Source: Octopus bimaculoides
Lineage: Eukaryota
Reading direction: 5' to 3'
Assembly (NCBI RefSeq): GCF_001194135.2
Contig: NC_069007.1
Coordinates: forward strand, 20,868,827-20,932,826
DNA: 64,000 bases
In this document: positions 3,223-46,053 of the stretch, piece after piece
Layout of the letters: each line of letters opens with the position of its first letter
Numbering within the stretch: the stretch's first letter is position 1
The notes under the pieces: model-generated
Databases searched by the model: none
The model's input: the letters and a program-made list of their open reading frames with translations, nothing else
What the model was told of the DNA's origin: nothing
Translations under genes and position numbers: made by a program

Positions 3223-4212
3223 TCACGTTTCACAATTGGAAGAATTTCTTTTGGTATGTATACGTTTGTGTCTGTTTAAATAATCCCCAGTGACGAACGA
3301 TTTCTCACATATTTCACAGTGATAGGGTCGTTCGCCAGTGTGCCTCCGTATATGGATAACAAGACTAGAATTCTGAGTGAAAGATTTACCACATATTTCA
3401 CAATGAAACTGTTTTACTCCCGTGTGGATCAATTTGTGTCTACTTAAATCATCGTTTTTGACAAATGATTTTCCACATGTTTCGCAACGATAGGGCTTTT
3501 CTCCTGTATGTATTCTATTATGTTTTGTTAAGACACTGTTAGAGACAAAAAATTTCCCACATGTTTTACATTGATAAGGCTTTTCTCCGGTGTGACTACG
3601 AATGTGGGCAATAAGATTCGAATTATTACTGAAAGATTTACCACACACTTGACAGTGATAAGGCTTTTCTCCGGTGTGACTACGAATGTGGGTAATAAGA
3701 TTGGAATTATTACTGAAAGATTTACCACACACTTGACAGTGATAAGGCTTTTCTCCGGTGTGTATTAATCTGTGTGCTGTTAAGTTAGTATTAGCCACAA
3801 ACGACTTCCCGCAGATTTCACAGTGAAATGGTTTTTCTCCTGTATGGCTACGTACGTGGATAACAAGATTAGAATTCTGAAAGAAAGATTTCCCACAAAT
3901 TTTACAATGAGACGATTTTTCTCCGGTGTGTCTACGTTTGTGTCTTGCTAAATTACTTTCAGAGACAAAAGGTTTCCCACACACATCACAGTGAAATGTA
4001 TTCTCTGCTTTGTGTAAATCTGTGTGTTTGAACAATTCATCTTCGGATGAGAATGTTTTTCTACAAATATCGCAACGATATTCAGCAATATTTCTTTGTT
4101 CGGTAAATGTCTCGCTATATAAAGGTTTCTCACCATTGTATGTTGGTGTAATTGGACTTCCATCGTTAATTACCGTGTTATTAGAAGAATCCAAGTGATT
4201 AACGTCTTCCAT
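3223..4212 (-). CDS. C2H2 zinc-finger protein G1, family A (10 fingers, acidic N-terminus)
   Basis: 329-aa ORF starting MEDVNHLDSSN; 10 CxxC-12-HxxxH repeats with TGEKP linkers; ends NCET-stop. Confidence 0.93.
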   Translation of the reverse strand: MEDVNHLDSSNNTVINDGSPITPTYNGEKPLYSETFTEQRNIAEYRCDICRKTFSSEDELFKHTDLHKAENTFHCDVCGKPFVSESNLARHKRRHTGEKSSHCKICGKSFFQNSNLVIHVRSHTGEKPFHCEICGKSFVANTNLTAHRLIHTGEKPYHCQVCGKSFSNNSNLITHIRSHTGEKPYHCQVCGKSFSNNSNLIAHIRSHTGEKPYQCKTCGKFFVSNSVLTKHNRIHTGEKPYRCETCGKSFVKNDDLSRHKLIHTGVKQFHCEICGKSFTQNSSLVIHIRRHTGERPYHCEICEKSFVTGDYLNRHKRIHTKRNSSNCET

Positions 4213-4650
4213 ATTAATTAACCAGGAATTCTTAAAAGCTGTAGAAATGTCTGTTGCTATTTCGGACTTGTATCGAAAGATCGCCGGTTCAATTTGTTAT
4301 TAGATATCACGGGACTTTGTTTACATGCTGTAATTAATTTAGCTAAACCAATTATAATACAAGGTTGGCGGTGTTGTTTGTAATATTGTCCCTTCTTTAA
4401 ATTTACGATGTAGCGTAGTTTGTGATGTAAGGAGATATAGAATTAAGCAGATATAGAACACCAACAATGTAACATATAAGTCACTCCTATGCTATCCACA
4501 TTGTGACGTTTATCATACTACAATTCAGAATTAAATTAACCAAACTTAACACAATAAGGTAATGTCGGTGAGAATTTCCCCCTCACCTTATGTACAACGG
4601 TGATATAAATTAATAGTCCCTTACATAATTCAAGACATTCATAAAAAGCC
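4213..4650 (-). promoter_or_regulatory. Family-A upstream cassette of G1 (distal part duplicated)
   Basis: GGCGGTGTTG at 4367-4376; a second partial copy GTCGGTG..TTTCCCCCTCACC..ACGGTGAT..CCCTTACATAATT at ~4564-4630. Confidence 0.55.
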
Positions 4651-5464
4651 TTCCGATGATAAGAATTTAGTCTTTCAAGTGTATCCCAATTCATGGTAAA
4701 GCAAAATGACAATAACGTATCAACGAAAGAGCCTCAGTTTGGTCACTCGACCAGCATGAAATAACAGTCAATTCCCCTCAAACCAGACCCTTTTGCCTTA
4801 GAAAAGAGACGTTCGGCAGTGTCGTCCTATGTATACAAAAATGAGATCGACACGGTTGAAAATGCTTTTCATTTTAGCTCTGAGCGATCATGCTAATCTA
4901 ATAGTAAACAACAACGTTTAACTTTTCCCTCCAACGGTTATAGAGTTGATTTTAGGCACCAATTCGCAGTGTTGTAGACGTCACGCCGTAATGACTGTCT
5001 CCACCCCCGCCAAATCGTTTTAACAACTGCATGCTTAAACCGATATGCAAATATATATATATATATATATANNNNNNNNNNNNNNNNNNNNNNNNNNNNN
5101 NNNNNNNNNNNNNNNNNNNNNNNNNNNNNNNNNNNNNNNNNNNNNNNNNNNNNNNNNNNNNNNNNNNNNNNNNNNNNNNNNNNNNNNTATATAGTGAAGG
5201 CAGGCATCAGCCAAATTAATTAAAAACAATGTGAATAAACAAGTATTACATTTAACAGAATATTCTGAATGCTAAAGGGATATTGAGAAAGAAAATAACA
5301 TTAACAAATATAGCTTAAACATTTTAATTTAAAATGCATACAATTATTATAAAGAAATATTTCAATTTATATGTAAATTATTTGAACATTTTGTCGTAAA
5401 TTTAAGAGGTAATATTTTACATAAATTTCTCATATTTCTGTTTATGAAGCATCTTTTTAAGAAG

Positions 5465-6275: not shown

Positions 6276-7991
6276 TTATGTTTCACATTTGAGAGGCTTC
6301 CCTCTAGTGTGCAATCGTTCATGTCTTTTTAAAAGACTGCTAGAAATGAAAGATTTCCCACATATTTCACAACAATAGGGTTTTTCTCCCGTGTGTTTCC
6401 GTTTGTGTATGTTTAAATCACTGTTATTAACAAAGGATTTCCCACACACTTCACAGGCACAAGGTTTTTCTCCAGTGTGTCTACGCTTGTGACTCATAAG
6501 ATCAAAATTTCGAGAGAAAGATTTCCCACACATATCACAAAGATATGACTTTTCTCCCGTGTGTATTTGCTTGTGCACAACAAGGGAAGAATTTTTACCG
6601 AACGACTTGTCACATATATTACAATGGTAAGGTTTCTCTCCTGTATGACTACGTACGTGGATAACAAGTTTCGAATTGTGAGTGAAAGCTTTTCNNNNNN
6701 NNNNNNNNNNNNNNNNNNNNNNNNNNNNNNNNNNNNNNNNNNNNNNNNNNNNNNNNNNNNNNNNNNNNNNNNNNNNNNNNNNNNNNNNNNNNNNNNNNNN
6801 NNNNNNNNNNNNNNNNNNNNNNNNNNNNNNNNNNNNNNNNNNNNNNNNNNNNNNNNNNNNNNNNNNNNNNNNNNNNNNNNNNNNNNNNNNNNNNNNNNNN
6901 NNNNNNNNNNNNNNNNNNNNNNNNNNNNNNNNNNNNNNNNNNNNNNNNNNNNNNNNNNNNNNNNNNNNNNNNNNNNNNNNNNNNNNNNNNNNNNNNNNNN
7001 NNNNNNNNNNNNNNNNNNNNNNNNNNNNNNNNNNNNNNNNNNNNNNNNNNNNNNNNNNNNNNNNNNNNNNNNNNNNNNNNNNNNNNNNNNNNNNNNNNNN
7101 NNNNNNNNNNNNNNNNNNNNNNNNNNNNNNNNNNNNNNNNNNNNNNNNNNNNNNNNNNNNNNNNNNNNNNNNNNNNNNNNNNNNNNNNNNNNNNNNNNNN
7201 NNNNNNNNNNNNNNNNNNNNNNNNNNNNNNNNNNNNNNNNNNNNNNNNNNNNNNNNNNNNNNNNNNNNNNNNNNNNNNNNNNNNNNNNNNNNNNNNNNNN
7301 NNNNNNNNNNNNNNNNNNNNNNNNNNNNNNNNNNNNNNNNNNNNNNNNNNNNNNNNNNNNNNNNNNNNNNNNNNNNNNNNNNNNNNNNNNNNNNNNNNNN
7401 NNNNNNNNNNNNNNNNNNNNNNNNNNNNNNNNNNNNNNNNNNNNNNNNNNNNNNNNNNNNNNNNNNNNNNNNNNNNNNNNNNNNNNNNNNNNNNNNNNNN
7501 NNNNNNNNNNNNNNNNNNNNNNNNNNNNNNNNNNNNNNNNNNNNNNNNNNNNNNNNNNNNNNNNNNNNNNNNNNNNNNNNNNNNNNNNNNNNNNNNTTTT
7601 CACACTGAAACCGCCTCTCGCCAGTATGTATCGTTTTATGTCTTGACAAAATAATATTAGAAACAAAATATTTCCCGCATATATTACAATGGAAAGGTTT
7701 CTCTCCTGTATGACTACGTACGTGGATAACAAGTTTCGAATTGTGAGTGAAAGCTTTTCCACATATTTCACACTGATATGGTTTCTCCTTCTTATGTATG
7801 TCTTTGTGTGTGATTAATTCATGCTCTGAAAAATATGTTTCCTTGCAAATCTCACAGCTATATTCAGTAATATTTCTCTGTCTTGATCTCTGTTCAGTGA
7901 ATTTTTCATTGCGTGCAAGTTTCTCACAGTTGTATGTTTGTGAAGCTGAATCTACATCGTTAGAAGATCCCAAGTGATTAACATCCTCCAT
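6276..7991 (-). CDS. C2H2 zinc-finger protein G2, family A (middle lies in an assembly gap)
   Basis: MEDVNHLGSSN start at 7991 in the same upstream context as its paralogues; fingers on both sides of the N-gap 6695-7597; ends KCET-stop. Continuity across the gap is unproven. Confidence 0.8.
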   Translation of the reverse strand: MEDVNHLGSSNDVDSASQTYNCEKLARNEKFTEQRSRQRNITEYSCEICKETYFSEHELITHKDIHKKEKPYQCEICGKAFTHNSKLVIHVRSHTGEKPFHCNICGKYFVSNIILSRHKTIHTGERRFQCEXXXXXXXXXXXXXXXXXXXXXXXXXXXXXXXXXXXXXXXXXXXXXXXXXXXXXXXXXXXXXXXXXXXXXXXXXXXXXXXXXXXXXXXXXXXXXXXXXXXXXXXXXXXXXXXXXXXXXXXXXXXXXXXXXXXXXXXXXXXXXXXXXXXXXXXXXXXXXXXXXXXXXXXXXXXXXXXXXXXXXXXXXXXXXXXXXXXXXXXXXXXXXXXXXXXXXXXXXXXXXXXXXXXXXXXXXXXXXXXXXXXXXXXXXXXXXXXXXXXXXXXXXXXXXXXXXXXXXXXXXXXXXXXXXXXXXXXXXXXXXXKAFTHNSKLVIHVRSHTGEKPYHCNICDKSFGKNSSLVVHKQIHTGEKSYLCDMCGKSFSRNFDLMSHKRRHTGEKPCACEVCGKSFVNNSDLNIHKRKHTGEKPYCCEICGKSFISSSLLKRHERLHTRGKPLKCET

Positions 7992-8608
7992 AATTAATGA
8001 CCAGGAATTCTTAAAAGCTGCAGAGGTGTATGTTAATATTAATCTAAAATAATTCAGTTTCATTTAACTGTTTACATCATTTTATGGAATTTGCTGAACT
8101 AATTACAATAGCAAGTTGGCGGTGTCGCTAATAGTTTCCCCTTGCTATAATTATTCCGGTGTTTTAAGTTAAAAGTTCCTAATATAGTTTAATCGATTCA
8201 TATACAGTTCCAATTCGATCTGTTTGATTCTTCAGTTTCATCCAGTCTGCTATTAGTTCTGATGAGAAGAACTCTGATTGAAGAAGAAAAAACAAAACAA
8301 ACTTGATGAATATCGTTGTTACATTTTGAAAGCAACGAGAAAGATATTCGGAAAAAAATTCGCCTGGCAGATGCCAGCAGCGGAATTCTGTTTTAAGCAT
8401 CGCATATAACCCAGAAAAAGACCCTTAAATGTGTTTACGGGGAGAACGATATTGAAAAACATAATAACGTCAGAACCACACCTGGAAATGGCACCATCTT
8501 TTGGCTTACCAACCTCTTGTCAAACCATCCAACCCATGTCATCTTGGAAAACAGACGTTAAATGATGATGTTTTGCCAGTCATAATTAATGAGATTGTCT
8601 TATAAACT

Positions 8609-9745: not shown

Positions 9746-11521
9746 TCATGTCTCACATTTTAAAGACTTCCCTCCAGTGTGTATGCGTACATGTCTCTTT
9801 AAAAGACTGCTTGTAATAAACGATTTCCCACATATTTCACAGTGAAACAGCTTTTCTCCCGTGTGTTTCCGTTTGTGTATGTTTAAATCACTGTTATTAA
9901 CAAAAGATTTCCCACACACTTCACAGGCACAAGGTTTTTCTCCAGTGTGTCTACGCTTGTGACTCATAAGATCAAAATTTCGAGAGAAAGATTTCCCACA
10001 CATATCACAAAGATATGACTTTTCTCCCGTGTGTATTTGCTTGTGCACAACAAGGGAAGAATTTTTACAGAACGACTTGTCACATATATCACAATGGTAA
10101 GGTTTCTCTCCTGTATGTATTTGATTGTGACGTTTTAAATCGTGGTTTTTAAGAAAAGCTTTCCCGCAGATTTCACAGTGATAAGGTTTCTCTCCAGTGT
10201 GTATTTTTTTGTGTGCTTTTAATAAGCTATTAGTCAGAAAAGATTTCCCACAAATATCACAAGAATAAGGATTTTCACCAGCATGCATCATTTTATGAAC
10301 TACAAGTTGTGAATTCACATAGAACGATTTCCCACATATATCACAGTGGAAAGGTTTCTCTCCAGTGTGGATTCGTTCATGTGTTTTTAAATCACTGTTA
10401 TTTACAAACGATTTGCCACAAATTTCACAATGATGTGGTAATTCTCCAGTGTGTCTACGTTTGTGAACTACGAGATTAGAATTATCAGAGAAAGATTTGC
10501 CACATATGTCACAGTGAAACGGGTTTTCTCCAGTGTGTATCCTACTATGTCTTTTCAAATTACTGCTATAGAGAAAAGACTTGCCACAAATTTCACAACT
10601 GAAGGGTTTTTCACCACTATGTATTCGTTCATGAGTTTTTAAATCACTGTTATTTACATAAGATTTGCCACATACTTCGCACACATACGGTTTTTCTCCT
10701 GAGTGCCGACGTTGGTGGATTGTAAGCTTAGCATTTTCAATAAAAGACTTCCCGCATATTTCACAATGAAACGGTTTTTCTCCAGTGTGTCTACGTTCAT
10801 GGATGACAAGTTTCAAATTATTTATAAAACTTTTTCCACATATTTCACAGTGTAACAATTTCTCTCCAGTGTGCAGCCTTTTGTGAATTGCCAAACTACT
10901 ATTGGAGACAAAACACTTCCCACAAACATTACAATTGCATGGTTTCTCTCCAGTATGACTACGTATATGAATGACAAGTTTCGAATTATTAATAAATGAT
11001 TTTCCACATATTTCACATTGAAATGGTCTCTCACCAGTATGTATCGTCTTATGACGTGACAAAATAATATTAGAAACAAAATATTTCCCGCATATATTAC
11101 AATGGAAAGGTTTCTCTCCGGTGTGACTGCGTACGTGGATAACAAGACTGGCATTCTGAGTGAAAGATTTTCCGCATATTTCACACTGATATGGTTTTTC
11201 TCCAGTGTGTATCCTTTTGTGAATTGCAAGATGAGAATTATTTACAAACGATTTCCCACATATCTCACAGTGAAATGGTTTCTCTCCTGTATGTGTTCTT
11301 GTGTGTGTTGTTAGAAAAACGTTCGATGGGAAAGATTTCCCGCATATTTCACAGTGGTAGGGTTTTTCTGTCTTGTGTATTTCTTTGTGTGATAATAATT
11401 CCTCTTCCGACGAGAATATTTTACTACAAATCTCACAGTTTTTTTCAGTAATATTGCTATGAAATGATTTTCCTTCAGCAAATGTTACGTTGGAAGTGTC
11501 CAAGTCCTTAACGTCTTCCAT
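9746..11521 (-). CDS. C2H2 zinc-finger protein G3, family A (20 fingers)
   Basis: 591-aa ORF, MEDVKDLDTSN start, 20 fingers, ends KCET-stop. Confidence 0.94.
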   Translation of the reverse strand: MEDVKDLDTSNVTFAEGKSFHSNITEKNCEICSKIFSSEEELLSHKEIHKTEKPYHCEICGKSFPSNVFLTTHTRTHTGEKPFHCEICGKSFVNNSHLAIHKRIHTGEKPYQCEICGKSFTQNASLVIHVRSHTGEKPFHCNICGKYFVSNIILSRHKTIHTGERPFQCEICGKSFINNSKLVIHIRSHTGEKPCNCNVCGKCFVSNSSLAIHKRLHTGEKLLHCEICGKSFINNLKLVIHERRHTGEKPFHCEICGKSFIENAKLTIHQRRHSGEKPYVCEVCGKSYVNNSDLKTHERIHSGEKPFSCEICGKSFLYSSNLKRHSRIHTGENPFHCDICGKSFSDNSNLVVHKRRHTGELPHHCEICGKSFVNNSDLKTHERIHTGEKPFHCDICGKSFYVNSQLVVHKMMHAGENPYSCDICGKSFLTNSLLKAHKKIHTGEKPYHCEICGKAFLKNHDLKRHNQIHTGEKPYHCDICDKSFCKNSSLVVHKQIHTGEKSYLCDMCGKSFSRNFDLMSHKRRHTGEKPCACEVCGKSFVNNSDLNIHKRKHTGEKLFHCEICGKSFITSSLLKRHVRIHTGGKSLKCET

Positions 11522-12427
11522 ATTAATTAACCAGGAATTCTTAAAAGCTCTAGAAATATCTGTGATTATAATCTATAACGGTCCAGTTTCTTGTCTTAGA
11601 TGTAATGAGACAATGTTTACATGATCTAATTAACTCACCTGAAGTAATTACAAAGATACGGCGGTGTCGTTCATATATTTTCCCCTCACCTCAATGATAC
11701 CGGCGACAAAATTGAAAGATGCCTAACATAATTTAAAACATTCTGAAATGCTAGAAAATTTCTTCGCATTGTTCTGTATATTTGTGTTGTTGTTGATGCC
11801 CGATCAATAATGTATATATGTATAATACATTTCAATTGTTTCATTTATTTTAAATAGTTTATTTCCTCACTTCAAATAGCGAAGAAGTGCCCTAATTTTT
11901 AGACAGCAAATAAGTCAAAATCTTCCTTTTATTGTACTACAGAAACAAAATCTTTCCCATGTCGCTTTGTTTGACAAAGTGAAATACAGTTGGCGTCTTA
12001 AAAAAGCTAATACAGCAAGCCCTGCTAACTGAACAGTAACCTTTTATTTTTTTTTCATTACATACAAACATTTGACTGCTATTTCTAGCAAGTCAAATGA
12101 TAACTTAAGAGGTCCTTCGTTGATACGTATAAGATATTTATGTGGATGTTGTATTTTAGATTCACAATGGATTAGACACAATGCAAAGAACAAACTGATA
12201 TAACTGAATGTGATGCTGGATGTAATAAATTGTATTAAGGACAGTTTAATTACGTCACCGGTATAATTGCGGTTTGGGAAAGTTTCTCAACGTCGCGAAC
12301 TTGTCATCTTCATAATTAATTTAATTTATATCATGTTAGCGAAATCTCATTACTCAGAAACACTGAACCATAATGGATTATAGATACTGACATTTCTTAG
12401 CTGTTTACGAATTCCCTATCGGTTAAA
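11522..12427. promoter_or_regulatory. Divergent promoter region G3/G4 with mirror-image cassettes
   Basis: Minus cassette GGCGGTGTCG 11660, CCGGCGA 11700, CCTAACATAATTT 11722; plus cassette ATTGTATTAAGG 12229, TCACCGGTA 12255. Confidence 0.6.
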
Positions 12428-13837
12428 ATGGAAGACGTTAATCAGTTGGACACTTCTGGTAAGACAATTCTTAACGATGTAGATTCGGTTGTGCAAACAT
12501 ACGATGACGAGAAACCTTTATATGGTGAAACAGTTATTGAACAGAAATCAATACAGAGAAATATTGGTGAATATAGTTGTGAGGTTTGTAAGAAAACATT
12601 TCCTTCACAACACGAAGTCTTCACACACAAGGAAACACACAAGAAGAAGTTAAAACCATATCGGTGTGAAATTTGCGGCAGATCATTCAAGCAGAATTCT
12701 CATCTTGTAGTTCACAAAAGAATTCATACTGGGGAAAAGCCTTTTGGCTGTGAAATATGCGGGAAATCATTCATTAAGAAACTGAATCTTGTCATTCACC
12801 TCCGTAGCCATACAGGCGAAAAACCCTTCCACTGTAAAATATGTGGCAAATCTTTCGTCTCCAAGAGTAATTTAGCAAGGCATGAAAGAATACACACTGG
12901 AGAAAATCCGTTAAACTGTGAAATATGTGGGATATCTTTTCATCATATTAATGATTTAACTACGCACAAAGGAAAGCACAATGGAAAAGAACCATTTCAC
13001 TGTGAAATATGTGAGAAATCTTTCGTCTCTAATAATCATTTAATAAGGCACCGAAGGATACACACTGGAGAAAAACCTTCTTCTTGTGATATTTGTGGGA
13101 AATCTTTTCTTGATAGAAGTAATTTAACAACTCACAAATTAATACACAGTGGAGAGAAACGGTTTCAGTGCAAAATGTGTGGAAAATCTTTTACCCAAAA
13201 TAATCATCTTGTAGTTCATAAAAGAAGACATACAGGAGAAAAGCCTTATCACTGTGAAATCTGTGGGAAGGCCTTTGTATCTAACAGTGATTTAAAAACA
13301 CATAAAATAACGCATACTGGAGAAAAACCTTTTCATTGCGAAACGTGTGGAAAATGCTTTACTCAGAAGTCCAGCCTTGTTGTTCACAGAAAAATACACA
13401 CTGGAGAAAAGCTGTTTCATTGTGAAGTGTGTGGAAAGTCTTTCATTAATAATTTTAATTTTGTTATCCACGTCCGTAGTCACACCGGAGAAAAACCTTT
13501 CCATTGTGAAATTTGTGGAAAGTCGTTTGTCTGTAAAAGTAAGTTAGTGACACACATAAGAACACACACTGGAGAAAAACCGTTTCACTGTGAAATCTGT
13601 GGGAAATTTTTTCTTGATAGTAGTAATCTAACAATACACATAAGAATACATACTGGAGAAAAGCCTTATCGTTGTAAAACTTGTGGGAAATCGTTTCTTA
13701 ATAGTAGTAATCTAACGACTCACAAAAGAATACACACTGGAGAGAAACCTTTTCAGTGCGAAATTTGTGGAAGATCTTTCCGTGACAGCCGTAATTTAAC
13801 ACCTCACAAAAGAACACATTTGAGAAAAAAAGTTTAA
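12428..13837 (+). CDS. C2H2 zinc-finger protein G4, family A (15 fingers)
   Basis: 469-aa ORF, MEDVNQLDTSG start, 15 fingers. Confidence 0.94.
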   Translation: MEDVNQLDTSGKTILNDVDSVVQTYDDEKPLYGETVIEQKSIQRNIGEYSCEVCKKTFPSQHEVFTHKETHKKKLKPYRCEICGRSFKQNSHLVVHKRIHTGEKPFGCEICGKSFIKKLNLVIHLRSHTGEKPFHCKICGKSFVSKSNLARHERIHTGENPLNCEICGISFHHINDLTTHKGKHNGKEPFHCEICEKSFVSNNHLIRHRRIHTGEKPSSCDICGKSFLDRSNLTTHKLIHSGEKRFQCKMCGKSFTQNNHLVVHKRRHTGEKPYHCEICGKAFVSNSDLKTHKITHTGEKPFHCETCGKCFTQKSSLVVHRKIHTGEKLFHCEVCGKSFINNFNFVIHVRSHTGEKPFHCEICGKSFVCKSKLVTHIRTHTGEKPFHCEICGKFFLDSSNLTIHIRIHTGEKPYRCKTCGKSFLNSSNLTTHKRIHTGEKPFQCEICGRSFRDSRNLTPHKRTHLRKKV

Positions 13838-15748: not shown

Positions 15749-16292
15749 CTATATGTTATATATAAAAATAAGATTATACATAATGTAAATCATGATTAGA
15801 ACATCAACCAACCAACGGAGATATGTATATAAATATATCTGAATATCTACATGTTTATTCGTGTAATAGTTCAGCAGGGGATGGGGCTAGTCGATTACAT
15901 CAACCCCACTGCTGAACCAGTATTCGTTTCATCGACCTCGAAAGGAGAAATAAAAGGCAAAGTCGGTGGAATTTGAACTCAGAACGTAAAGACGAGCAAA
16001 ATGCCGCATTTTGCCTGGCGCGCTAACGATTCTGCTAGATCACCGCCTTAATCAACTTGATTACAAATGTTTGTGATTGTATTAAATTATATGAGGGAAA
16101 TTCAACTAACGACGCCGTTGTCATTAAAAGAAGGGAAAAATTATCAACGACACCGCGCACTTTGTATGGGAGAAATTGATTTGCTGAAATCGTGTTAAAC
16201 ATTGTGTTAGGATATCTAAGAGAAGCAACGGAACCGTAATACATTATATTTATAGACATTTGTGAACCTGTAAGCATTCCTGGTTAATTAGT

Positions 16293-17864
16293 ATGGAAGA
16301 CGTTAATCACTTGGATACTTCTAACGATCTAGATTCAGTTCCACAGACATACAAGAGTGAAAAAGCTGTGTGTGATGAAACGGTAACTGAAGAAAGATCA
16401 TCAAACAGAAATCTTACTGAATATAGCTGTGATATTTGTAGCAAAACATTTCCTTCCGAACAGGAAGCCTTCACGCACAAAGAAATACACAAGACAGAAA
16501 AACCTTATTGTGAAATTTGTGAGAAATTTTTCTTAAGAGATTCTCATTTTGTTATCCACAAACGTATCCACACTGGAGAAAAACCGTTTCATTGTGAACT
16601 ATGTAAAAAATCTTTTATTTCTAACAGCGATTTAAAAAGACACAGACGAATACATACCGGGGAAAAACGGTTTCACTGCGAAATATGTGGAGAAGCATTT
16701 ATAGAAAGATCAAAACTTGCTATTCACATACGTCGTCATACTGGAGAAAAACCGTTCGAATGTGAAATATGTAAGAAATCGTTTGTTACTAACGGTGAAT
16801 TAACAAAACACACCACTTCACACACTCGGGAAAAACCATTCCACTGTAAAATATGCGGGGGAACTTTCATTGATAGTTCAAAACTTGTTATTCACATACG
16901 CCGTCATACGGGAGAGAAACCATTCCATTGTGAAATATGTACGAAATCATTTGTCAGTAACGGTGAGTTAAGAAAACACGAGGCTGTGCATACTCCACAA
17001 AAACCATTTCACTGTGAAATGTGTGGGAAAGCTTTCGTTAGTGATGCAGATCTTGTTATTCACACATGTAAGCACGCTGGGGGGAAACCTTATCACTGTG
17101 ATGTGTGTGGGAAATCGTTTAAATCTGACAGTTACTTAACAAAACACAGAATCAGACACACTGGAAACAAACGCTTTCACTGTGAAATGTGTGGGAAGTC
17201 TTTCGCCTCTAAGAATAATGTAGTAAAACACGAAAGAAGACACACTGGGGAGAATCTGGTTTACTGTGAAACGTGTGGAAAATCGTTTGTCACCAAAGAC
17301 GACTTAAACAAACACAAAAGAATTCACACTGGAGAAAACCCTTTTCCCTGTGAAATCTGTGGGACCTATTTTCTCGATTTTAGTCATTTAACAACGCATA
17401 AAAGAATACATACGGGAGAAAGGCCGTTTCTCTGTGACATTTGTGGAAAATCTTTTGCTCAGAATTCCTATTTTATCGTTCACAAAAGAATTCATACTGG
17501 AGAAAAACCTTACCGTTGCGAAATCTGTGGAAAGTGTTTTGTATGTAAAAGTGATTTATCAACTCATGAAAGAACACATACTGGATTAAAACCGTTTGAT
17601 TGTAAAATATGTGGCAAAGCATTTGCTCGGAATTCGAATCTTATAGTTCACAGAAGAATACATACTGGGGATAAACCTTTTCATTGCGAAGCTTGTGGGA
17701 AACCATTTACCTCAAACAGTGATTTGACGATACACAGACGAATACACACTGGGGAAAAACCCTTTCACTGTAATATATGTGGGAAAAAATTTATTGCACA
17801 CAGTCACTTAAAAAGACATGTACAAGTACATACAAGCGAGGGGCCTATCATATATGAAACGTGA
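16293..17864 (+). CDS. C2H2 zinc-finger protein G5, family A (17 fingers)
   Basis: 523-aa ORF, MEDVNHLDTSN start, 17 fingers, ends IYET-stop. Confidence 0.94.
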   Translation: MEDVNHLDTSNDLDSVPQTYKSEKAVCDETVTEERSSNRNLTEYSCDICSKTFPSEQEAFTHKEIHKTEKPYCEICEKFFLRDSHFVIHKRIHTGEKPFHCELCKKSFISNSDLKRHRRIHTGEKRFHCEICGEAFIERSKLAIHIRRHTGEKPFECEICKKSFVTNGELTKHTTSHTREKPFHCKICGGTFIDSSKLVIHIRRHTGEKPFHCEICTKSFVSNGELRKHEAVHTPQKPFHCEMCGKAFVSDADLVIHTCKHAGGKPYHCDVCGKSFKSDSYLTKHRIRHTGNKRFHCEMCGKSFASKNNVVKHERRHTGENLVYCETCGKSFVTKDDLNKHKRIHTGENPFPCEICGTYFLDFSHLTTHKRIHTGERPFLCDICGKSFAQNSYFIVHKRIHTGEKPYRCEICGKCFVCKSDLSTHERTHTGLKPFDCKICGKAFARNSNLIVHRRIHTGDKPFHCEACGKPFTSNSDLTIHRRIHTGEKPFHCNICGKKFIAHSHLKRHVQVHTSEGPIIYET

Positions 17865-20800: not shown

Positions 20801-20959
20801 TGAAAAATTATCAAATTTACATCTCAAAATCAGTCTATTGCATTTAATTGAAATTGATTAATTAGTAGTTCTTAGGAAATTTAAATGCATCTGTCAGTGC
20901 AAAATGTCATCTCGACAAAGTACTGCAAGTTCCATCAATTTACCATTCTATACTACAAT

Positions 20960-21792: not shown

Positions 21793-22941
21793 CTATAAAA
21801 CAGTTTTGTCTCTTGTGTGTATTTTTTTATGTAAACTAAGAGCTGAACTGTGAGAGAAAGATTTCCCACACAGCTCACAATGGAATGGTTTTTCTCCAGT
21901 ATGTACTCTTTTGTGAGATACAAGATGAGCATTTTGAGTGAAAGATTTACCACAAGTATCACAGTGAAACCGTTTTTCTCCAGTGTGTGTTCTTTTATGA
22001 GTTCTTAAATTGCTGTTATCGAGAAAACTTTTCCCACAAATCTCACAATGAGAAGGTTTTTCTCCTGTATGGACTCTTATGTGTTTGACTAAATCGTTTT
22101 TAGAGAAGAAAGACTTCTCGCATACTTGACAGTGAAACGGTTTCTCTCCTGTGTGTATTCTTCTGTGTCTGGCTAAATTACTTCTAGAGACGGAAGGAAT
22201 TCCACATAGTTCACAGTGGAAAGGTTTTTCTCCGGTGTGACTCCGTATATGGATAACAAGACTTGATTTCCAACAGAAAGATTTTCCACATATTTCACAA
22301 TGAAACGGATTTTCTTTAGCTTCTGTTTCTAAATCACCACTTATATCAAATTGTTCCCCATCTGTTTGATTTCCGGAGGTCTCCTCTCCAGTGTGGCTAC
22401 GCATATGGAGAAGAAGATTCGGTTTATGAACGAAAGTATCACCACAGATTTCGCACCGAAACAGCATTCTTCTCGTGTGTACTTTTGTATGTGTTTTTAA
22501 GACAGAAAGATAAGCGAATGATTTTCCACACGTTTCGCAATGGAACGGTTTCTCTCCAGTGTGACTTCGTACGTGGATAATAAGTCCTGAATTATGGAAG
22601 AAAGACTTCCCGCATATTTCACACGGAAACAATCTTTGTCTACTGTGTCGTCTTTTGTGCCATGTTAATTTTTTTCTAGAGGCAAAACACTTCTGACATA
22701 TTTCACACTCATTTGTCTTTTCGCTCTTGTGTGTGCGTGTGTGCATAAATAATTCGTGTTCTGAAGAGAACATTTTCTTACAAATCTCACAGCTATATTC
22801 AGTAATATTTCCGTCTAATGATTTTTGATCAGTAAATGTTTCATCACATAAGGTTTTCTTACCGTTGTCTGTCTGTGAAATTGAATCTACATCGTTAAAA
22901 ACAGTTGCGTTAGAAGAATCTATGTCATCAACGTCTTCCAT
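21793..22941 (-). CDS. C2H2 zinc-finger protein G6, family A (11 fingers split by an acidic spacer)
   Basis: MEDVDDIDSSN start at 22941 within the 400-aa ORF; 5 fingers, then the spacer TSGNQTDGEQFDISGDLETEAKE, then 6 fingers. Confidence 0.92.
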   Translation of the reverse strand: MEDVDDIDSSNATVFNDVDSISQTDNGKKTLCDETFTDQKSLDGNITEYSCEICKKMFSSEHELFMHTRTHKSEKTNECEICQKCFASRKKLTWHKRRHSRQRLFPCEICGKSFFHNSGLIIHVRSHTGEKPFHCETCGKSFAYLSVLKTHTKVHTRRMLFRCEICGDTFVHKPNLLLHMRSHTGEETSGNQTDGEQFDISGDLETEAKENPFHCEICGKSFCWKSSLVIHIRSHTGEKPFHCELCGIPSVSRSNLARHRRIHTGEKPFHCQVCEKSFFSKNDLVKHIRVHTGEKPSHCEICGKSFLDNSNLRTHKRTHTGEKRFHCDTCGKSFTQNAHLVSHKRVHTGEKPFHCELCGKSFSHSSALSLHKKIHTRDKTVL

Positions 22942-23476: not shown

Positions 23477-24577
23477 ATGGATTCAGTTGCACAGATATAC
23501 AATGGTAAGGAATCTTTATGTAATGAAACATTTACTAAACAAAGATCATTACGCAAAAATATTACTGAATATCTCTGTAATATTTGTAAGAAAACATTCT
23601 CTTCAGAAGATGGTTTATTAACGCATAAGAAAATACACAAGAGTAAAAAACCATTTCGCTGTGAAATATGTGAGAAATCTTATGTATCTAAAAGTAATTT
23701 AACAAGTCACAAGAGGATACATACTGGAGAAAGACTATTTCGTTGTGAAATATGTGGGAAATATTTTATCCACAATTGTAAACTTGTTGCCCATATGAGT
23801 AGTCACACTGGAGAGAAACGGTTCCATTGTGAAATATGTACGAAATCGTTCGTGAGTATAAGTAACTTGAAGGAACATAGGAACTTACACACTGGAGAGA
23901 AACGGTTTCACTGTGAGATATGTGGGAAATCTTTCTTTTGGAAAAAGAGTTTTGTTATCCACGTGCGTTGTCATACGGGAGAGAAACCCTATCGTTGTGA
24001 TATATGTGGAAAATCTTTCGTATCTAGTAGCAATTTAGTACATCACAAAAAAATACATACTGGCGAAAAACCATTTCACTGTGAAATATGTGGTAAATCG
24101 TTTGTCGCTAATGACGAATTGACAAAACACAACAGAACACATACTGGAGAAAACCCTTTCCACTGTGATATATGCGGGGAATCGTTTCTTGACAGTAGTA
24201 ACTTAACAACTCATAAACGGACACACACCGGAGAGAGACCTTTTCACTGTGAAATATGTGGGAAATCTTTCAGACAGAATTCCCATCTTATATTTCACAT
24301 AAGAAGGCATACTGGAGAAAAGCCTTTTCATTGTGAAATGTGTGGTTTATCTTTCGTTTCTAACAGTGACTTAACAATGCACAAAAGAAGACATACTGGA
24401 GACAAACAGCATCACTGTGAAATATGTGGGAAATCTTTTGTCTCCAGCAGTGAACTGACATCTCATAAAAGAACTCACACTGGAGAAAACTGTGTTGTTT
24501 GTATGAAATCTTTTGTGTCTAAGAAAGAATTGCTGGCACATAAAAATACACACTTGAGTGATACATATTCCCCGTGA
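23477..24577 (+). CDS. C2H2 zinc-finger protein G7, family A (12 fingers, N-terminally shortened)
   Basis: 366-aa ORF starting MDSVAQ that keeps the ETFTKQRS...NITEY segment; family-A upstream context present. Confidence 0.93.
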   Translation: MDSVAQIYNGKESLCNETFTKQRSLRKNITEYLCNICKKTFSSEDGLLTHKKIHKSKKPFRCEICEKSYVSKSNLTSHKRIHTGERLFRCEICGKYFIHNCKLVAHMSSHTGEKRFHCEICTKSFVSISNLKEHRNLHTGEKRFHCEICGKSFFWKKSFVIHVRCHTGEKPYRCDICGKSFVSSSNLVHHKKIHTGEKPFHCEICGKSFVANDELTKHNRTHTGENPFHCDICGESFLDSSNLTTHKRTHTGERPFHCEICGKSFRQNSHLIFHIRRHTGEKPFHCEMCGLSFVSNSDLTMHKRRHTGDKQHHCEICGKSFVSSSELTSHKRTHTGENCVVCMKSFVSKKELLAHKNTHLSDTYSP

Positions 24578-27484: not shown

Positions 27485-28540
27485 ATGGATCGCGTTAATC
27501 ACCTGAACACTTCTAACGATGTTGGTTCAGTAATAGAAGCACACAATGGTAAGAAAGCTTTATGTAATGAAACATTTACTAAACAAAGATCAACGCGTAA
27601 AAATATTACTGAATACAGCTGTGAAATTTGTAAGAAGACTTTCTCTTCGGAGCATAAATTATTCGCGCACAAAGACACACACAAGAAGGGGAACCCCCTC
27701 GAGTGTGAAATGTGTAAGAAATCGTTTGTCTCCAAAATTAAATTAACAAGACACAAGAAAATACACGTCTGCGATAAACCGTTTCAGTGTCAGATCTGTG
27801 AGAAATCTTTCTTTCAGAATGCAGAACTCGTTATCCATGTACGTAGTCATACTGGAGAGAAACCATTCCATTGTCAAACATGTGGGAAAACATTCGTCAG
27901 TGGTCTTGTGTTAAGAAGACATATGAAAATACATACAGGAATAAAACCGTTTCGGTGCGAAATATGTGGGGAGTCTTTCGTTCGTAATCCGAATCTTCTG
28001 ATCCACATACGTAGTCACACTGGAGAGAAACCCTATCATTGTGATATTTGTGAAAAATCCTTCGTTTCCAGAAGTAATTTGGCGATACACAAACGACGGC
28101 ATACTGGCGAAAAACTATTTCACTGTGAAATATGTGGTAAATCGTTTGTCACTAATGGCGAATTAACAAAACACAACAGAACACATACTGGAGAAAACCC
28201 TTTTCAGTGTGACATTTGTGGGGAATCGTTTCTTGACAGTAGTAACTTAACAACTCATAAACGAATCCATACTGGAGAGAGACCTTTTCCCTGTGAAATA
28301 TGTGGGAAATCTTTCACCCAGAATTCCCATCTTGCAGTTCACAGAAGAATGCACACTGGAGAAAAGCCTTTTCATTGTGAAACTTGTGGGAAATCTTTTG
28401 TGTCCAACAGTGATTTAACAACTCATAAAAGGATTCATACTGGAGAGAAACCTTTTCATTGTGAAATATGTGGCAAATCTTTCAGACAGAATTCTAGTCT
28501 TGTTGTTCACAAAAGAATACACACTGGGGAAAAAGTTTGA
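27485..28540 (+). CDS. C2H2 zinc-finger protein G8, family A (11 fingers)
   Basis: 351-aa ORF, MDRVNHLNTSN start, 11 fingers. Confidence 0.93.
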   Translation: MDRVNHLNTSNDVGSVIEAHNGKKALCNETFTKQRSTRKNITEYSCEICKKTFSSEHKLFAHKDTHKKGNPLECEMCKKSFVSKIKLTRHKKIHVCDKPFQCQICEKSFFQNAELVIHVRSHTGEKPFHCQTCGKTFVSGLVLRRHMKIHTGIKPFRCEICGESFVRNPNLLIHIRSHTGEKPYHCDICEKSFVSRSNLAIHKRRHTGEKLFHCEICGKSFVTNGELTKHNRTHTGENPFQCDICGESFLDSSNLTTHKRIHTGERPFPCEICGKSFTQNSHLAVHRRMHTGEKPFHCETCGKSFVSNSDLTTHKRIHTGEKPFHCEICGKSFRQNSSLVVHKRIHTGEKV

Positions 28541-30481: not shown

Positions 30482-31564
30482 TCACATTTCGCATTTAAAA
30501 GTCTCTCCTCCAATATGTATTTCTTTGTGTCTTTTTAAGCGACTGCTAGTGATAAAAGATTTTCCACAAATATCACAATGATAAGGCTTTTCTCCAGTAT
30601 GTATTGTTTTGTGAACTGCAAGATGGGAATTTTGAGTGAAAGATTTCCCACATATTTCACAGTGGAAAGGTTTCTCTCCAGTATGGATTCGTTTATGTGT
30701 TGTTAAATTACTACTGTCCATAAAACATTCGCCACACGTATCACAGTGAAACGGATTTTCTCCAGTGTGAATTCTTTTGTGTTTCGTTAAATCACCATTG
30801 GTGACAAAAGACTTTCCACATACTTCACAGTGAAACGGTTTTTCTCCCGTATGTATTTTTTCGTGTCTTACTAAATTACTTTTAGAGACGAAAGACTTGT
30901 CACATGTTCCACAATGATAAGGTTTCTCTCCGGTATGACTACGTATATGGACAACAAGACTCGAGTACTGAATGAAAGATTCCCCACATATTTCACAGTG
31001 GCGCGGTTTTTCTCCAGTATGTATCCTTTTGTGACTTACTAAATAACTATTGTGCACAAAAGATTTTCCACAGACATCGCAGCGAAAGGGTTTCTCTCCA
31101 GTATGTATAATTTTATGCGTTGTTAAGTGACCATTTGTGATAAAAGATTTCCCACACATTTCACAGTGATATGGTTTTTCTCCAGTGTGACTACGTACGT
31201 GAATTACAAGGTGAGAATTACTTATGAAAGATTTACCACATATTTTGCAGTGATACCGTTTTCCTCCGCTGTGACTACGTTTGTGTCTTGCTAATTGACT
31301 CTCAGAGACGAAGGATCTCCCACATATTTCACAGTAAGGTTTTTCTGGCTTGTGTACGTTACTATGTGTAAATAATTCATAGTCAGAAGGGAATGCTTTC
31401 TTACAGATGTCACAGCTATAGTTTGTAATATTTCTACGTAATGATCTTTGTTCAGTAAATGTTTCGTTATATAAAGCTTTCTTACCATTGAATGTCTGTG
31501 TGATTGAATCTATATCGTTAAAAACAGTTGTATTAGAAGTATCCAACTGATTAACGTCTTCCAT
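30482..31564 (-). CDS. C2H2 zinc-finger protein G9, family A (11 fingers)
   Basis: 360-aa ORF, MEDVNQLDTSN start, ends KCEM-stop. Confidence 0.93.
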   Translation of the reverse strand: MEDVNQLDTSNTTVFNDIDSITQTFNGKKALYNETFTEQRSLRRNITNYSCDICKKAFPSDYELFTHSNVHKPEKPYCEICGRSFVSESQLARHKRSHSGGKRYHCKICGKSFISNSHLVIHVRSHTGEKPYHCEMCGKSFITNGHLTTHKIIHTGEKPFRCDVCGKSFVHNSYLVSHKRIHTGEKPRHCEICGESFIQYSSLVVHIRSHTGEKPYHCGTCDKSFVSKSNLVRHEKIHTGEKPFHCEVCGKSFVTNGDLTKHKRIHTGENPFHCDTCGECFMDSSNLTTHKRIHTGEKPFHCEICGKSFTQNSHLAVHKTIHTGEKPYHCDICGKSFITSSRLKRHKEIHIGGETFKCEM

Positions 31565-44571: not shown

Positions 44572-46053
44572 TCATGCAGTGTGCATTGTTGCATGTTTCT
44601 TTAAGCTATCACTTCTGGTAAACGATTTCCCACATATTTCACAAGGATGCGGTCTTTCTCCGGTATGTGTTCTTCTGTGAACTATTAGATTTGAATTATA
44701 AGAAAAAGATTTACCACATATTTCACAACACAGTTTTTCTCCAGTGTGGATTTTTTTGTGTTGTGACAAGACATTATTATTGGAGAAAGATTTGCCGCAG
44801 ATGTTACATTTAAAGGATTTCCCTCCAGTATGTGTCCTTCTGTGAGCAGAAAGATAAGATTTATGAAAGAAACTTTTCCCACATATTTCACAGTAACAAG
44901 TTTTCTCTCCACTGTGTATTCTCTTATGGACAGAAAGATTGAAATTATTAGAGAAATATTTGTTACATATTTCACAATGACTGAGTTTTTCTCCAGTGTG
45001 TGTTCTTCTGTGTCTTTTTAAAGAATTATTCAAACTAAAAGACATTCCGCATATCTCACAGACAAATGGTTTTTCTCCAGTGTGTGTTGTTTTGTGTCTT
45101 TTTAAAGAATAATTCAAGCTAAACGACTTCCCACAAATCACGCAGAGAAAAGCTTTTTCTCCGGTGTGTGTTCTTTTGTGTCCAACAAGATTGGCATTGT
45201 TAGAGAAAGATTTGCCACAAATTTCACAACAATATGGTCTTTCCCCAGTATGGGTCCTGTTGTGTATTTTTAATTTACTACTACACATAAATGCTTTCCC
45301 ACATATTTCACAGTGGAAGGGTATTTGTCCAGTATGGGCCCTGTCATGTAGTTTTAACTTACTACTAGATATAAATGCTTTTCCACATATTCTACAGTGA
45401 TACGGTTTCTCTCCTGTATGAGTCCTGTTGTGCTCTTTTAAGTGACAACTAGTTACAAATGCTTTTCCACATATTTCACAGTGATAAGGTTTTTCTCCAG
45501 TATGGATCCTTTTATGTGTTTTTAACTGAATATTAGACACAAATGATTTTCCACAAACTTCACAGCAGAAGGGTTTTTCTCCAGTATGAATCCTGTTGTG
45601 TATTTTCAAATTTGTTCTCGACACAAAAGTATTTCTGCATATTTCACAGTGATAGAGTTTTTTCCCAGCGTGTGTTTTTATGTGTTGTGTTAAATTACTT
45701 TTAGAGCCAAATGCTTTTCCACATATTTCACAGGGATAAGGTTTTTCTCCCGTATGAGTTCTGTTATGTATTTTTAATTGACTACTACACACAAACGACT
45801 TGCCGCATATTTCACACTGATATGGTTTTTTCCTATTGTGCATTTCTTTGTGTTCGAAGATTTCCTGTTCTAAAGAGAAAAGTTTCCCACAAACATCACA
45901 TTTATGTTTCGTAATATTTACCTGGAACAATCGTTTAGTAAATGTTTCCCCATGTAGAGATTTCTCATATTTCTCCGTGTCCCTAACTGTATTTGTATTG
46001 TTAAAAACAGTTGTGTTAGACGTATTGAAGTCCTTAACGTCCTCCATGTTCAT
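44572..46053 (-). CDS. C2H2 zinc-finger protein G13, divergent family A (16 fingers)
   Basis: 493-aa ORF (MN)MEDVKDFNTSNTTVFN; the MEDV ATG is at 46047. Confidence 0.93.
   Translation of the reverse strand: MNMEDVKDFNTSNTTVFNNTNTVRDTEKYEKSLHGETFTKRLFQVNITKHKCDVCGKLFSLEQEIFEHKEMHNRKKPYQCEICGKSFVCSSQLKIHNRTHTGEKPYPCEICGKAFGSKSNLTQHIKTHAGKKLYHCEICRNTFVSRTNLKIHNRIHTGEKPFCCEVCGKSFVSNIQLKTHKRIHTGEKPYHCEICGKAFVTSCHLKEHNRTHTGEKPYHCRICGKAFISSSKLKLHDRAHTGQIPFHCEICGKAFMCSSKLKIHNRTHTGERPYCCEICGKSFSNNANLVGHKRTHTGEKAFLCVICGKSFSLNYSLKRHKTTHTGEKPFVCEICGMSFSLNNSLKRHRRTHTGEKLSHCEICNKYFSNNFNLSVHKRIHSGEKTCYCEICGKSFFHKSYLSAHRRTHTGGKSFKCNICGKSFSNNNVLSQHKKIHTGEKLCCEICGKSFSYNSNLIVHRRTHTGERPHPCEICGKSFTRSDSLKKHATMHTA

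What the first reader, a model, noticed from the sequence alone, without database searches (positions are those of the whole stretch)
4075..4212. Conserved ~45-aa acidic N-terminal module plus an atypical first finger in all ten family-A proteins: candidate lineage-specific effector domain (KRAB/ZAD analogue)
Seen: the consensus MEDVNxLDTSN(TTVFN)DVDSxxQTYNGEKxLYxETFTEQRSxxRNITEYSCEICKKTFSSExELFxHKxxHK is kept in G1-G9 and G13, whereas the finger contact residues differ widely. All indels in it are in-frame: the 5-aa loss in G2/G5/G8, the larger loss in G3 and the N-terminal loss in G7. Finger 1 always has an acidic helix (SExEL), is followed by a non-canonical linker, and is unlikely to bind DNA. 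The YNGEKPLYxETF part resembles a fossil TGEKPFxCE linker. I do not recognise it as KRAB, SCAN, BTB or ZAD. Inference: a protein-interaction or transactivation/repression module that evolved from a dead finger.
Basis: partly seen in the sequence, partly recalled or inferred. Interest (0 to 1): 0.7.

Follow-up and report, generated by a model that had tools for sequence, protein, structure and literature searches.

The report
Octopus zinc-finger family's shared acidic leader
About 120 octopus zinc-finger genes, ten of them in this window, start with the same unnamed ~45-residue acidic, probably unstructured leader plus one constant finger, but it is only weakly constrained, so an effector role is plausible and unproven.

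Summary
All ten family-A ORFs start with MEDVNxLDTSN…ETFTxQRS…NIxEY, followed by a constant first C2H2 finger and a non-TGEKP linker.

The window is from Octopus bimaculoides. The same unit heads about 120 ZNF genes on at least 16 chromosomes and also occurs in O. sinensis. A search of 1.84 billion proteins found nothing outside Octopus. Pfam and PDB give no match to residues 1-47.

- **Structure:** AlphaFold2 with 73 sequences predicts residues 1-45 as disordered (pLDDT about 40); finger 1 folds normally.
- **Selection among paralogs:** ω is 0.67, against 0.33 for finger 1 and 0.17 for fingers 2-3. It is significantly below 1, but codon positions 1+2 and 3 evolve almost equally fast, and no residue is strictly kept.
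- **Selection between species:** the leader changes more than twice as fast in amino acids as the downstream fingers.
- **Why it looks conserved:** the middle of each array is scrambled by finger duplication and loss, while both ends persist.
- **Origin:** the GEKPL…ETF "fossil linker" resemblance beats 200 of 200 shuffles.

Best reading: a new, loosely constrained, acidic disordered leader derived from decayed finger sequence. A FiNZ/KRAB-like effector role is plausible but untested.

The parts
4081..4212 (-). G1 acidic N-terminal leader, aa 1-44 (the finding)
   Evidence: no Pfam hit
4012..4080 (-). G1 constant finger 1 (YRCDICRKTFSSEDELFKHTDLH), followed by the linker KAENT
4213..4375 (-). 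G1 conserved 5' flank: acceptor-like tttctacag at 4239-4247 and AACACCGCC at 4367-4375
7863..7991 (-). G2 leader, aa 1-43
7794..7862 (-). G2 finger 1
11444..11521 (-). G3 leader, aa 1-26 (22-aa internal loss)
11375..11443 (-). G3 finger 1
12428..12571 (+). G4 leader, aa 1-48
12572..12640 (+). G4 finger 1
16293..16421 (+). G5 leader, aa 1-43
16422..16490 (+). G5 finger 1
22798..22941 (-). G6 leader, aa 1-48
22729..22797 (-). G6 finger 1
23477..23569 (+). G7 leader, aa 1-31 (first 17 aa lost; the ATG is fused to DSV...)
23570..23638 (+). G7 finger 1
27485..27613 (+). G8 leader, aa 1-43
27614..27682 (+). G8 finger 1
31421..31564 (-). G9 leader, aa 1-48 (sequence used for the AF2 model and the genome search)
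31352..31420 (-). G9 finger 1 (AF2 beta-beta-alpha, pLDDT 84-87)
45907..46047 (-). G13 leader, aa 1-47 (most divergent copy in the window)
45838..45906 (-). G13 finger 1

Best explanation
This is the constant 5' unit of an Octopus-restricted subfamily of C2H2 zinc-finger genes, with about 120 members in O. bimaculoides.

The unit has two parts:
- An acidic leader of about 45-48 residues that starts at Met1. It is rich in Thr, Asn, Ser, Asp and Glu, has a net charge of about -4.6, and is predicted to be intrinsically disordered.
- One family-constant C2H2 finger. Its 'recognition' positions do not vary with the rest of the array, and it joins finger 2 by H-x-x-E-K-P instead of H-T-G-E-K-P.

At least the second half of the leader looks like a decayed finger plus linker: T-x-x-G-E-K-P-L-x-x-E-T-F-x5-L-x2-N...P-E-Y-x-C.

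All members inherited the unit by descent. It looks strikingly conserved next to the fingers because the middle of each array is rapidly rearranged by finger-unit duplication and loss, while the two ends of the array persist.

The leader is under real but weak-to-moderate purifying selection, typical of a disordered region that works through composition and short linear motifs. The most likely role (inferred, not shown) is a flexible partner-recruiting effector tail. That could be acidic activation or co-repressor recruitment, as proposed for the Glu-rich FiNZ leader of cyprinid ZNFs. Finger 1 would then serve as a constant adaptor rather than a DNA-reading finger.
For: SHOWN:
- Family membership and anatomy.
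- 86 and 106 genomic hits from two leader-only queries; adding leader-containing hits from a third, longer query gives about 120 loci on at least 16 chromosomes, nearly all without stops and at ORF starts.
- The genome is O. bimaculoides, and copies exist in O. sinensis.
- Four of the five annotated protein models found (two O. bimaculoides, two O. sinensis) start at this Met.
- No Pfam or PDB relative.
- AF2 with a 73-sequence alignment: residues 1-45 have pLDDT 38-46 and no secondary structure; F1 and F2 are beta-beta-alpha with pLDDT 77-87.
- Composition: D+E 18.5%, K+R 8.9%, net charge -4.6.
- Selection among paralogs: ML omega is 0.668 for the leader, and omega = 1 is rejected with 2dlnL about 36.5. 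NG86 on 36 independent sister pairs gives 0.67.
- Selection between species: three putative ortholog pairs give omega 0.44, from 19 synonymous and 38 nonsynonymous changes.
- F1 helix positions are conserved while those of F2 and F3 are not.
- Relic linker: hhalign aligns tqt~~~EKpL~~Et with [14 protein letters not shown], score 17.5, and 0 of 200 shuffles reach it.
- Members that lost exactly F1 join ...RNI directly to the next finger, as expected if NIPEY-x-C is a linker equivalent.
- Array scrambling with constant ends.

INFERRED: the effector or partner-binding role. This rests on position, charge, disorder and analogy with KRAB, ZAD and FiNZ (FiNZ as described in PMC10547256).
Against: - Constraint is weak. 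Positions 1+2 and 3 evolve at 0.80 and 0.90, and the adjacent 5' flank at 1.26.
- No leader column has synonymous changes greatly outnumbering nonsynonymous ones.
- Large in-frame losses are tolerated: G3 loses 22 aa and G7 loses 17 aa. About twenty further genomic hits match only the first 30-34 residues of the leader query.
- Between species the leader's dN (0.12) exceeds that of the fingers (0.05).
- No known motif, fold or partner was identified, and no expression or binding data are available here.
- The relic-finger match covers only 14 columns (hhalign probability 12%).
Confidence: 0.55

Rival explanations
1. Tolerated relic. The leader is decayed finger sequence with no function of its own. 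It persists because every copy inherited it, because it lies between the only start codon and the fingers and so must stay open, and because the first ~150 nt of the coding exon share nucleotide-level constraints with the start-codon context, the nearby 3' splice site and the promoter-proximal DNA.
For: - Near-equal rates at codon positions 1+2 and 3 (0.80 vs 0.90), and p(1+2) = 0.246 vs p(3) = 0.258.
- Four-fold sites are unusually conserved in the leader: p4 is 0.18, against 0.44 in F1.
- The 5' flank from -130 to -1 is also conserved among paralogs and orthologs.
- No strictly conserved residue.
- Large deletions are tolerated.
- AF2 predicts disorder.
- E2 conservation could reflect the +4 G of the start context (a direct reading of the sequence).
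Against: - Omega is significantly below 1 in paralogs and is 0.44 in orthologs.
- Measured against the fingers' dS, leader dN/dS would be only 0.22-0.27.
- Met1 and full length are kept in most of about 120 copies, and none shifts to a downstream start.
- No special RNA structure explains synonymous constraint: mean z is -0.04.
Confidence: 0.27
2. Concerted evolution. Gene conversion or unequal exchange between neighbouring paralogs keeps the 5' ends alike, so the similarity reflects homogenisation rather than selection.
For: In the tandem array at C28:15.90-15.92 Mb, the stretch from -100 to +250 is 99-100% identical between genes whose remaining fingers match at only 57-70% in register and 75-95% out of register. 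Neighbouring window genes G6-G9 cluster together in the 5' tree.
Against: - Copies on at least 16 chromosomes show graded, tree-like divergence down to about 40% identity.
- The same leader-versus-finger contrast appears between species.
- The mosaic is equally explained by scrambling of the arrays, for example a two-finger unit amplified about eight times in L042.
- Conversion does not explain omega below 1.
Confidence: 0.08
3. A DNA- or RNA-level element overlaps the coding sequence, for example a promoter-proximal or downstream regulatory element, or a shared small-RNA or editing substrate. On this reading, that element is what is conserved.
For: Synonymous divergence in the leader is lower than in the fingers, both in paralogs (dS 0.41 vs 1.02) and in orthologs (0.28 vs 0.54). 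Conservation runs continuously from about -200 into the leader. An upstream motif, GACACCGCC, is shared at -126 to -163.
Against: - No excess RNA stability from -40 to +170: z is -0.04, against -0.26 for the finger region.
- The fingers' dS may be inflated by non-orthologous finger alignment or inter-finger conversion.
- Omega below 1 shows that the peptide itself matters.
Confidence: 0.07

Closest known systems
[quoted passage not shown] 2023, PMC10547256)
   Same: Both are short N-terminal sequences that define a large, lineage-specific, tandemly clustered poly-ZNF subfamily. Both are acidic, have no similarity to named domains, and sit at the very start of the protein (for FiNZ; here).
   Different: FiNZ is 28 aa and described as highly conserved. 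This leader is about 45-48 aa, only weakly constrained (omega 0.44-0.67), and comes with a constant first finger. FiNZ-ZNFs have knock-down evidence for TE repression; this family has none.
KRAB domain of tetrapod KRAB-ZNFs (Pfam PF01352)
   Same: N-terminal position in front of a rapidly evolving finger array. The genes sit in clusters and the family is large.
   Different: There is no sequence match. KRAB is encoded on separate exons and binds TRIM28; here leader and fingers form one open frame. No helical element is predicted, and conservation is much weaker.
ZAD (zinc-finger-associated domain, PF07776) of insect ZNFs
   Same: A lineage-specific N-terminal module of a clustered ZNF expansion.
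   Different: ZAD is a folded, Zn-binding, four-Cys dimerisation domain. This leader has no conserved Cys (Cys 1.7% of residues, none conserved), no predicted fold and no Pfam hit.
Acidic, disordered activation domains (functional class, e.g. Gcn4 or VP16 type)
   Same: Net negative charge, Ser/Thr-rich, a few conserved bulky hydrophobic residues (L, V, F, I), predicted disorder, and tolerance of indels.
   Different: Activity was not tested. The same composition fits repression-recruiting tails such as FiNZ and KRAB.
Single C2H2 fingers used for protein-protein contacts (e.g. Drosophila dimerising fingers, PMC12774644)
   Same: Finger 1 is constant across paralogs, has an acidic helix, and lacks the canonical TGEKP coupling to the next finger.
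   Different: No flanking beta-strands were predicted. The CGx-Phi motif named in that paper's abstract was not looked for, and only the abstract was read. Dimerisation could not be modelled with the tools available.

Membership tests
KRAB (PF01352) | Match to the KRAB profile (A/B box) | tested here: not met
   hmmscan against Pfam-A of five leader+F1 segments, one leader-only segment and the ten leader-only sequences of A2 gave no KRAB hit even at E<=10.
KRAB (PF01352) | Binds TRIM28/KAP1 | not testable with these tools
   Needs a binding assay.
SCAN (PF02023) / BTB (PF00651) | Match to the profile; folded helical dimerisation domain | tested here: not met
   No Pfam hit. AF2 gives pLDDT below 50 and no secondary structure in residues 1-45.
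ZAD (PF07776) | Four conserved Zn-binding Cys and a profile match | tested here: not met
   No Pfam hit. No conserved Cys in the leader columns.
FiNZ | Sequence similarity to the 28-aa cyprinid FiNZ consensus | not tested
   The FiNZ sequence or profile was not available in the libraries used. The 1.84-billion-protein profile search with the leader returned no fish protein.
FiNZ | Short, acidic, extreme N-terminal leader of a lineage-specific poly-ZNF expansion | tested here: met
   Net charge -4.6 over 48 aa. The leader starts at Met1 in about 120 genes. This is a functional resemblance only.
C2H2 zinc finger (PF00096), for finger 1 | C-x2-C-x12-H-x3-H with a beta-beta-alpha fold | tested here: met
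   Pfam zf-C2H2 and zf-C2H2_6 hits at E from 3.5e-7 to 1e-4. The pattern is present in all ten genes. AF2 gives beta-beta-alpha with pLDDT 84-87.
C2H2 zinc finger, for the leader itself (relic finger) | Detectable profile similarity to finger plus linker | tested here: inconclusive
   HMMER/Pfam gives none. hhalign against the family's own F2-F3 profile gives a 14-column match to HTGEKPfxCE, P = 0.0025 and probability 12%; 0 of 200 shuffles reach it. The Cys and His ligands are absent.
Acidic activation domain (functional class) | Activates a reporter when tethered | not testable with these tools
   Only composition and disorder could be checked.

The most novel reading that the evidence does not exclude
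The leader plus finger 1 is a genuine, Octopus-born effector module, the cephalopod counterpart of KRAB, ZAD and FiNZ. It would recruit a specific cofactor (silencing or activating) to the targets of 120 or more rapidly diversifying ZNFs. That would give the first experimental handle on what part of the octopus ZNF expansion does.
Probability: 0.3. Interest if true: 0.7.

Novelty: new variant of a known kind. Interest (0 to 1): 0.45.

Why it matters
Octopus genomes carry one of the largest C2H2-ZNF expansions known. The two papers I could read on this say nothing about an octopus-specific N-terminal module: a 2025 study of cephalopod C2H2 expansions never mentions one, and a 2023 metazoan survey describes such a module only for cyprinid fish.

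A family-defining leader gives three things:
- A simple marker that splits off a subfamily of about 120 genes, concentrated on chromosomes 27 and 28.
- A small, portable piece to test for activation, repression or partner binding.
- A worked example of an N-terminal ZNF-associated region arising from decayed fingers.

The analysis also carries a caution. Conservation judged against finger arrays of paralogs is misleading, because the arrays are scrambled. By the usual tests the leader is only weakly constrained.

Tried and rejected
- **Word-indexed protein search:** tried twice with full-length members, restricted to the leader. It found nothing, so the index seems not to reach these proteins. 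I relied instead on the exhaustive HMM search.
- **Alignment query on the own genome:** not accepted, so single sequences were used.
- **Per-site substitution counts from ancestral states:** I did not try another route and used 36 independent sister pairs instead.
- **RNA-structure explanation for slow synonymous sites:** no signal, mean z -0.04.
- **Young tandem duplicates as a neutral yardstick:** the region is full of assembly gaps (7,276 N in 25 kb) and the arrays are rearranged. Only the stretch from -200 to +300 was usable.
- **Fourth cross-species pair:** L083, from a sequencing run of unknown species, against L015. The L083 frame breaks after finger 2, so it may be a pseudogene. It was not pooled, and the run accession appears in no paper held.
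- **Albertin et al. 2015:** could not be read in the library.
- **Fold search:** not run on the AF2 model, because the leader is modelled at pLDDT below 50 and the rest is ordinary fingers.

Full report
**What is there**

The window holds 18 ORFs of at least 150 aa; 15 of them are C2H2-ZNF ORFs that look single-exon. Ten of them have ATGs at 4212-, 7991-, 11521-, 12428+, 16293+, 22941-, 23477+, 27485+, 31564- and 46047-. Each of these begins with MEDVNxLDTSN(TTVFN)DVDSxxQTYNGEKxLxxETFTxQRSxxRNITEY. A C-x2-C-x12-H-x3-H finger follows (…CEICKKTFSSEHELFTHKxxH), then a linker lacking the T-G of HTGEKP. The finding's coordinates 4075-4212 are the G1 leader (aa 1-44 = 4081-4212).

**Where it comes from and how widespread it is**

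The window is G000:C27:20868827-20932826 of a 2.34-Gb genome. Exact look-ups identify it as Octopus bimaculoides: one hit is XP_052833736.1, on an 18,637,145-bp contig whose length equals that of C28.

- Residues 1-50 of G9 find 86 places in the genome.
- A more central leader sequence finds 106.
- Adding the leader-containing hits of a third, longer query (an O. sinensis leader plus F1-F2), the union is about 120 loci on at least 16 chromosomes. Most are on C27 and C28. Nearly all lie at the start of open frames of 250-900 aa without stops.
- A profile of the ten leaders, searched with HMMER against 1.84 billion representative proteins, found eight true hits. Six are attributed to Octopus by their names or accessions: O. 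bimaculoides, and O. sinensis XP_029652431.1 and XP_029645730.2. The other two come from an unnamed sequencing run and a metagenome. A ninth hit is a spurious bacterial repeat protein.
- How many other cephalopod proteomes that library contains is unknown, so 'Octopus-restricted' holds only as far as the data reach.
- Four of the five annotated protein models among the hits (two O. bimaculoides, two O. sinensis) start at the leader's Met.

**Not a named domain**

Residues 1-47 have no Pfam hit at E<=10 and no PDB sequence relative. Finger 1 matches zf-C2H2 profiles.

Two papers on ZNF expansions were checked. The 2025 cephalopod C2H2 study never mentions an N-terminal module (PMC12513265). The 2023 metazoan survey describes the analogous 28-aa Glu-rich FiNZ leader only for cyprinid fish (PMC10547256).

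**Family-wide anatomy**

From 75 non-redundant members the consensus is MEDVNHLDTSNTTVFNNIDSVTQTYSDEKPLCSETFTKQRSLQRNIPEY | RCEICRKTFSSEHEVFTHKEIH | NKEKP | YHCEICGKSF….

- The first 48 aa are acidic: D+E 18.5%, K+R 8.9%, net charge -4.6. They are rich in T, N and S.
- Helix positions -1/+3/+6 of finger 1 are 85/77/50% conserved. In finger 2 the figures are 36/21/24%, and finger 3 is similar. Finger 1 is therefore a constant finger, not part of the variable reading head.
- Seven members have lost exactly finger 1, joining …RNI to the next finger.
- One member (L019) has a stop at the first Cys of F1.

**Structure**

AlphaFold2 with a 73-sequence alignment gives pLDDT 38-46 and no secondary structure for residues 1-45. 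Fingers 1 and 2 are beta-beta-alpha at pLDDT 77-87. In the structural sense the leader is a disordered region, not a domain.

**Selection among paralogs**

| Measure | Leader | F1 | F2-F3 |
|---|---|---|---|
| NG86 omega, 36 independent sister pairs | 0.67 (dN 0.28, dS 0.41) | 0.29 | 0.23 |
| ML omega (GY+F3X4, fixed tree) | 0.668 | 0.333 | 0.170 |
| p-distance, codon positions 1+2 vs 3 | 0.246 / 0.258 | 0.174 / 0.293 | 0.212 / 0.387 |
| ML relative rate, positions 1+2 vs 3 | 0.80 / 0.90 | 0.52 / 1.02 | 0.70 / 1.85 |

- Omega = 1 is rejected for the leader (lnL -6138.8 vs about -6157.1, 2dlnL about 36.5).
- The codon-position signal is almost absent in the leader.
- The alignable columns of the 140 nt upstream of the ATG evolve at a relative rate of 1.26.
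- No leader column shows the 'synonymous only' pattern of the finger Cys, His and Phe. The best are E2 (21 identical / 9 synonymous / 5 nonsynonymous) and the E of GEKP (19/8/8).
The peptide is under purifying selection, but weakly, and it is only modestly more conserved than its 5' flank.

**Selection between species**

Two O. sinensis loci were paired with their best O. bimaculoides matches. Orthology is putative: it rests on best hit and collinearity, with upstream identity of 0.65-0.92.

| Segment | dN | dS | omega |
|---|---|---|---|
| Leader | 0.122 | 0.276 | 0.44 |
| F1 | 0.101 | 0.254 | 0.40 |
| Downstream fingers | 0.053 | 0.544 | 0.10 |

These values are pooled over three pairs. In amino acids the leader is thus the fastest-evolving part of the protein, the opposite of the impression gained from paralogs.

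**Why it looks conserved among paralogs**

- In the tandem array at C28:15.90-15.92 Mb, the stretch from -100 to +250 is 99-100% identical between genes. Their remaining fingers match at only 57-70% in register.
- Finger-by-finger comparison shows shifted best matches and internal amplification of a two-finger unit.
- About a third of complete members also share a constant C-terminus, …LKRHxxIHTGGKxFNCET-stop.
- So both ends of the array persist while the middle is reshuffled. This inflates the apparent contrast and the fingers' dS.
- Flanks beyond about -200 and 3' of the stop are unalignable in pairs with about 80% coding identity. The whole coding unit, leader included, is therefore conserved relative to the surrounding DNA.

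**Origin**

A profile of the leader, aligned by hhalign to a profile of the family's own F2-F3 region, places tqt~~~EKpL~~Et on [14 protein letters not shown]. The score is 17.5, P = 0.0025 and probability 12%. None of 200 column-shuffled leaders reaches this score (mean 7.7, sd 1.9, max 15.7).

Read directly, the consensus also keeps F-x5-L-x2-N, where a finger has F-x5-L-x2-H, and ends in P-E-Y-x-C, where a linker has K-P-Y-x-C. The 'fossil finger' idea is therefore modestly supported for the second half of the leader.

**Nucleotide-level rivals**

- Synonymous divergence is lower in the leader than in the fingers.
- Conservation runs on into the 5' flank, which carries an acceptor-like tttctcag at about -27.
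- Many paralogs have a perfect donor, tggtaagt, at about -135.
- In six of the ten window genes the motif GACACCGCC lies at -126 to -163.
- RNA folding from -40 to +170 shows no excess stability (mean z -0.04, 28 genes).
- Constraints from the start context, the splice site and promoter-proximal DNA may add to the conservation, but they cannot explain omega below 1.

**Verdict**

This is an undescribed, Octopus-restricted leader that defines a ZNF family. It is acidic, disordered, derived at least in part from decayed finger sequence, and paired with a constant first finger. It is under weak-to-moderate purifying selection. A KRAB/FiNZ-like effector role is the most likely function but rests on analogy. 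A tolerated relic remains a serious rival.

Noticed in passing
window 4367-4375(-), 8118-8126(-), 11660-11668(-), 16149-16157(+), 23067-23075(-), 31713-31721(-): The motif GACACCGCC (at most 1 mismatch) lies 126-163 nt upstream of the ATG, on the sense strand, in 6 of the 10 family-A genes. There are 9 hits in the window against 2.6 expected. It may be a shared promoter element.
   Followed up: partly
window about 25-30 nt 5' of each family-A ATG (e.g. 4239-4247, - strand); loci L006-L029 at about -135: An acceptor-like tttctcag/tttctacag sits just upstream of every ATG. Many paralogs elsewhere also carry a perfect donor-like tggtaagtagaaaata about 135 nt upstream, which suggests a conserved ~105-nt intron in the 5'UTR. 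The window's own genes lack the donor-like sequence. No transcript data were available.
   Followed up: partly
window 3223-3264(-), 6276-6317(-), 9746-9787(-), 30482-30523(-); many loci: Many family members end in ...LKRHxxIHTGGKxxKCET-stop. This is a constant last finger followed by a finger cut off just after its first Cys. Both ends of the array are constant and the middle is variable.
   Followed up: partly
window 34163-35602(+), 39955-40917(+), 41544-42590(+), 49221-50162(-), 56051-56650(+): A second ZNF family starts [15 protein letters not shown]..., with only about 10 residues before its first finger. It has very regular TGEKPY-x-CD-x-CGKSFS units and no leader.
   Followed up: no
window 11521/12428 and 22941/23477: G3/G4 and G6/G7 are head-to-head pairs with ATGs 907 and 536 bp apart, so each pair shares one short intergenic region. 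The G6/G7 spacer contains short tandem repeats (ttatcaaa/ccagaagcgaata).
   Followed up: no
window 5072-5187, 6695-7596, 39660-39732, 41383-41392, 55661-55933: These are assembly gaps (runs of N). The 902-N gap lies inside G2, so its finger count and its '595-aa ORF' are artefacts of the gap.
   Followed up: yes
G000:C28:15903000-15928000 (L071-L073; genes L042, L043, L048, L049): This is a young tandem array. The 5' units are 99-100% identical but the arrays are rearranged. L042 carries a two-finger unit amplified about eight times.
   Followed up: partly
G000:C27:14281877 (+) (L064): Here the leader heads an open frame reported as 2152 aa, which may be a giant poly-ZNF. Only the first 741 aa were seen.
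   Followed up: no
L019 (G000:C28:14663404-14663553, -): This family member has a stop codon exactly at the first Cys of finger 1, with finger sequence continuing in frame afterwards. It is a likely recent pseudogene.
   Followed up: no
L078 (O. sinensis CM016886.1), gene starting at locus position 20822: The F1-F2-F3 block is duplicated inside the array, so the 'constant' finger 1 occurs twice.
   Followed up: no
L077 1-2918 (O. sinensis CM016873.1): A gene with a DDE_Tnp_IS1595 transposase domain lies about 7 kb upstream of a leader-bearing ZNF.
   Followed up: no
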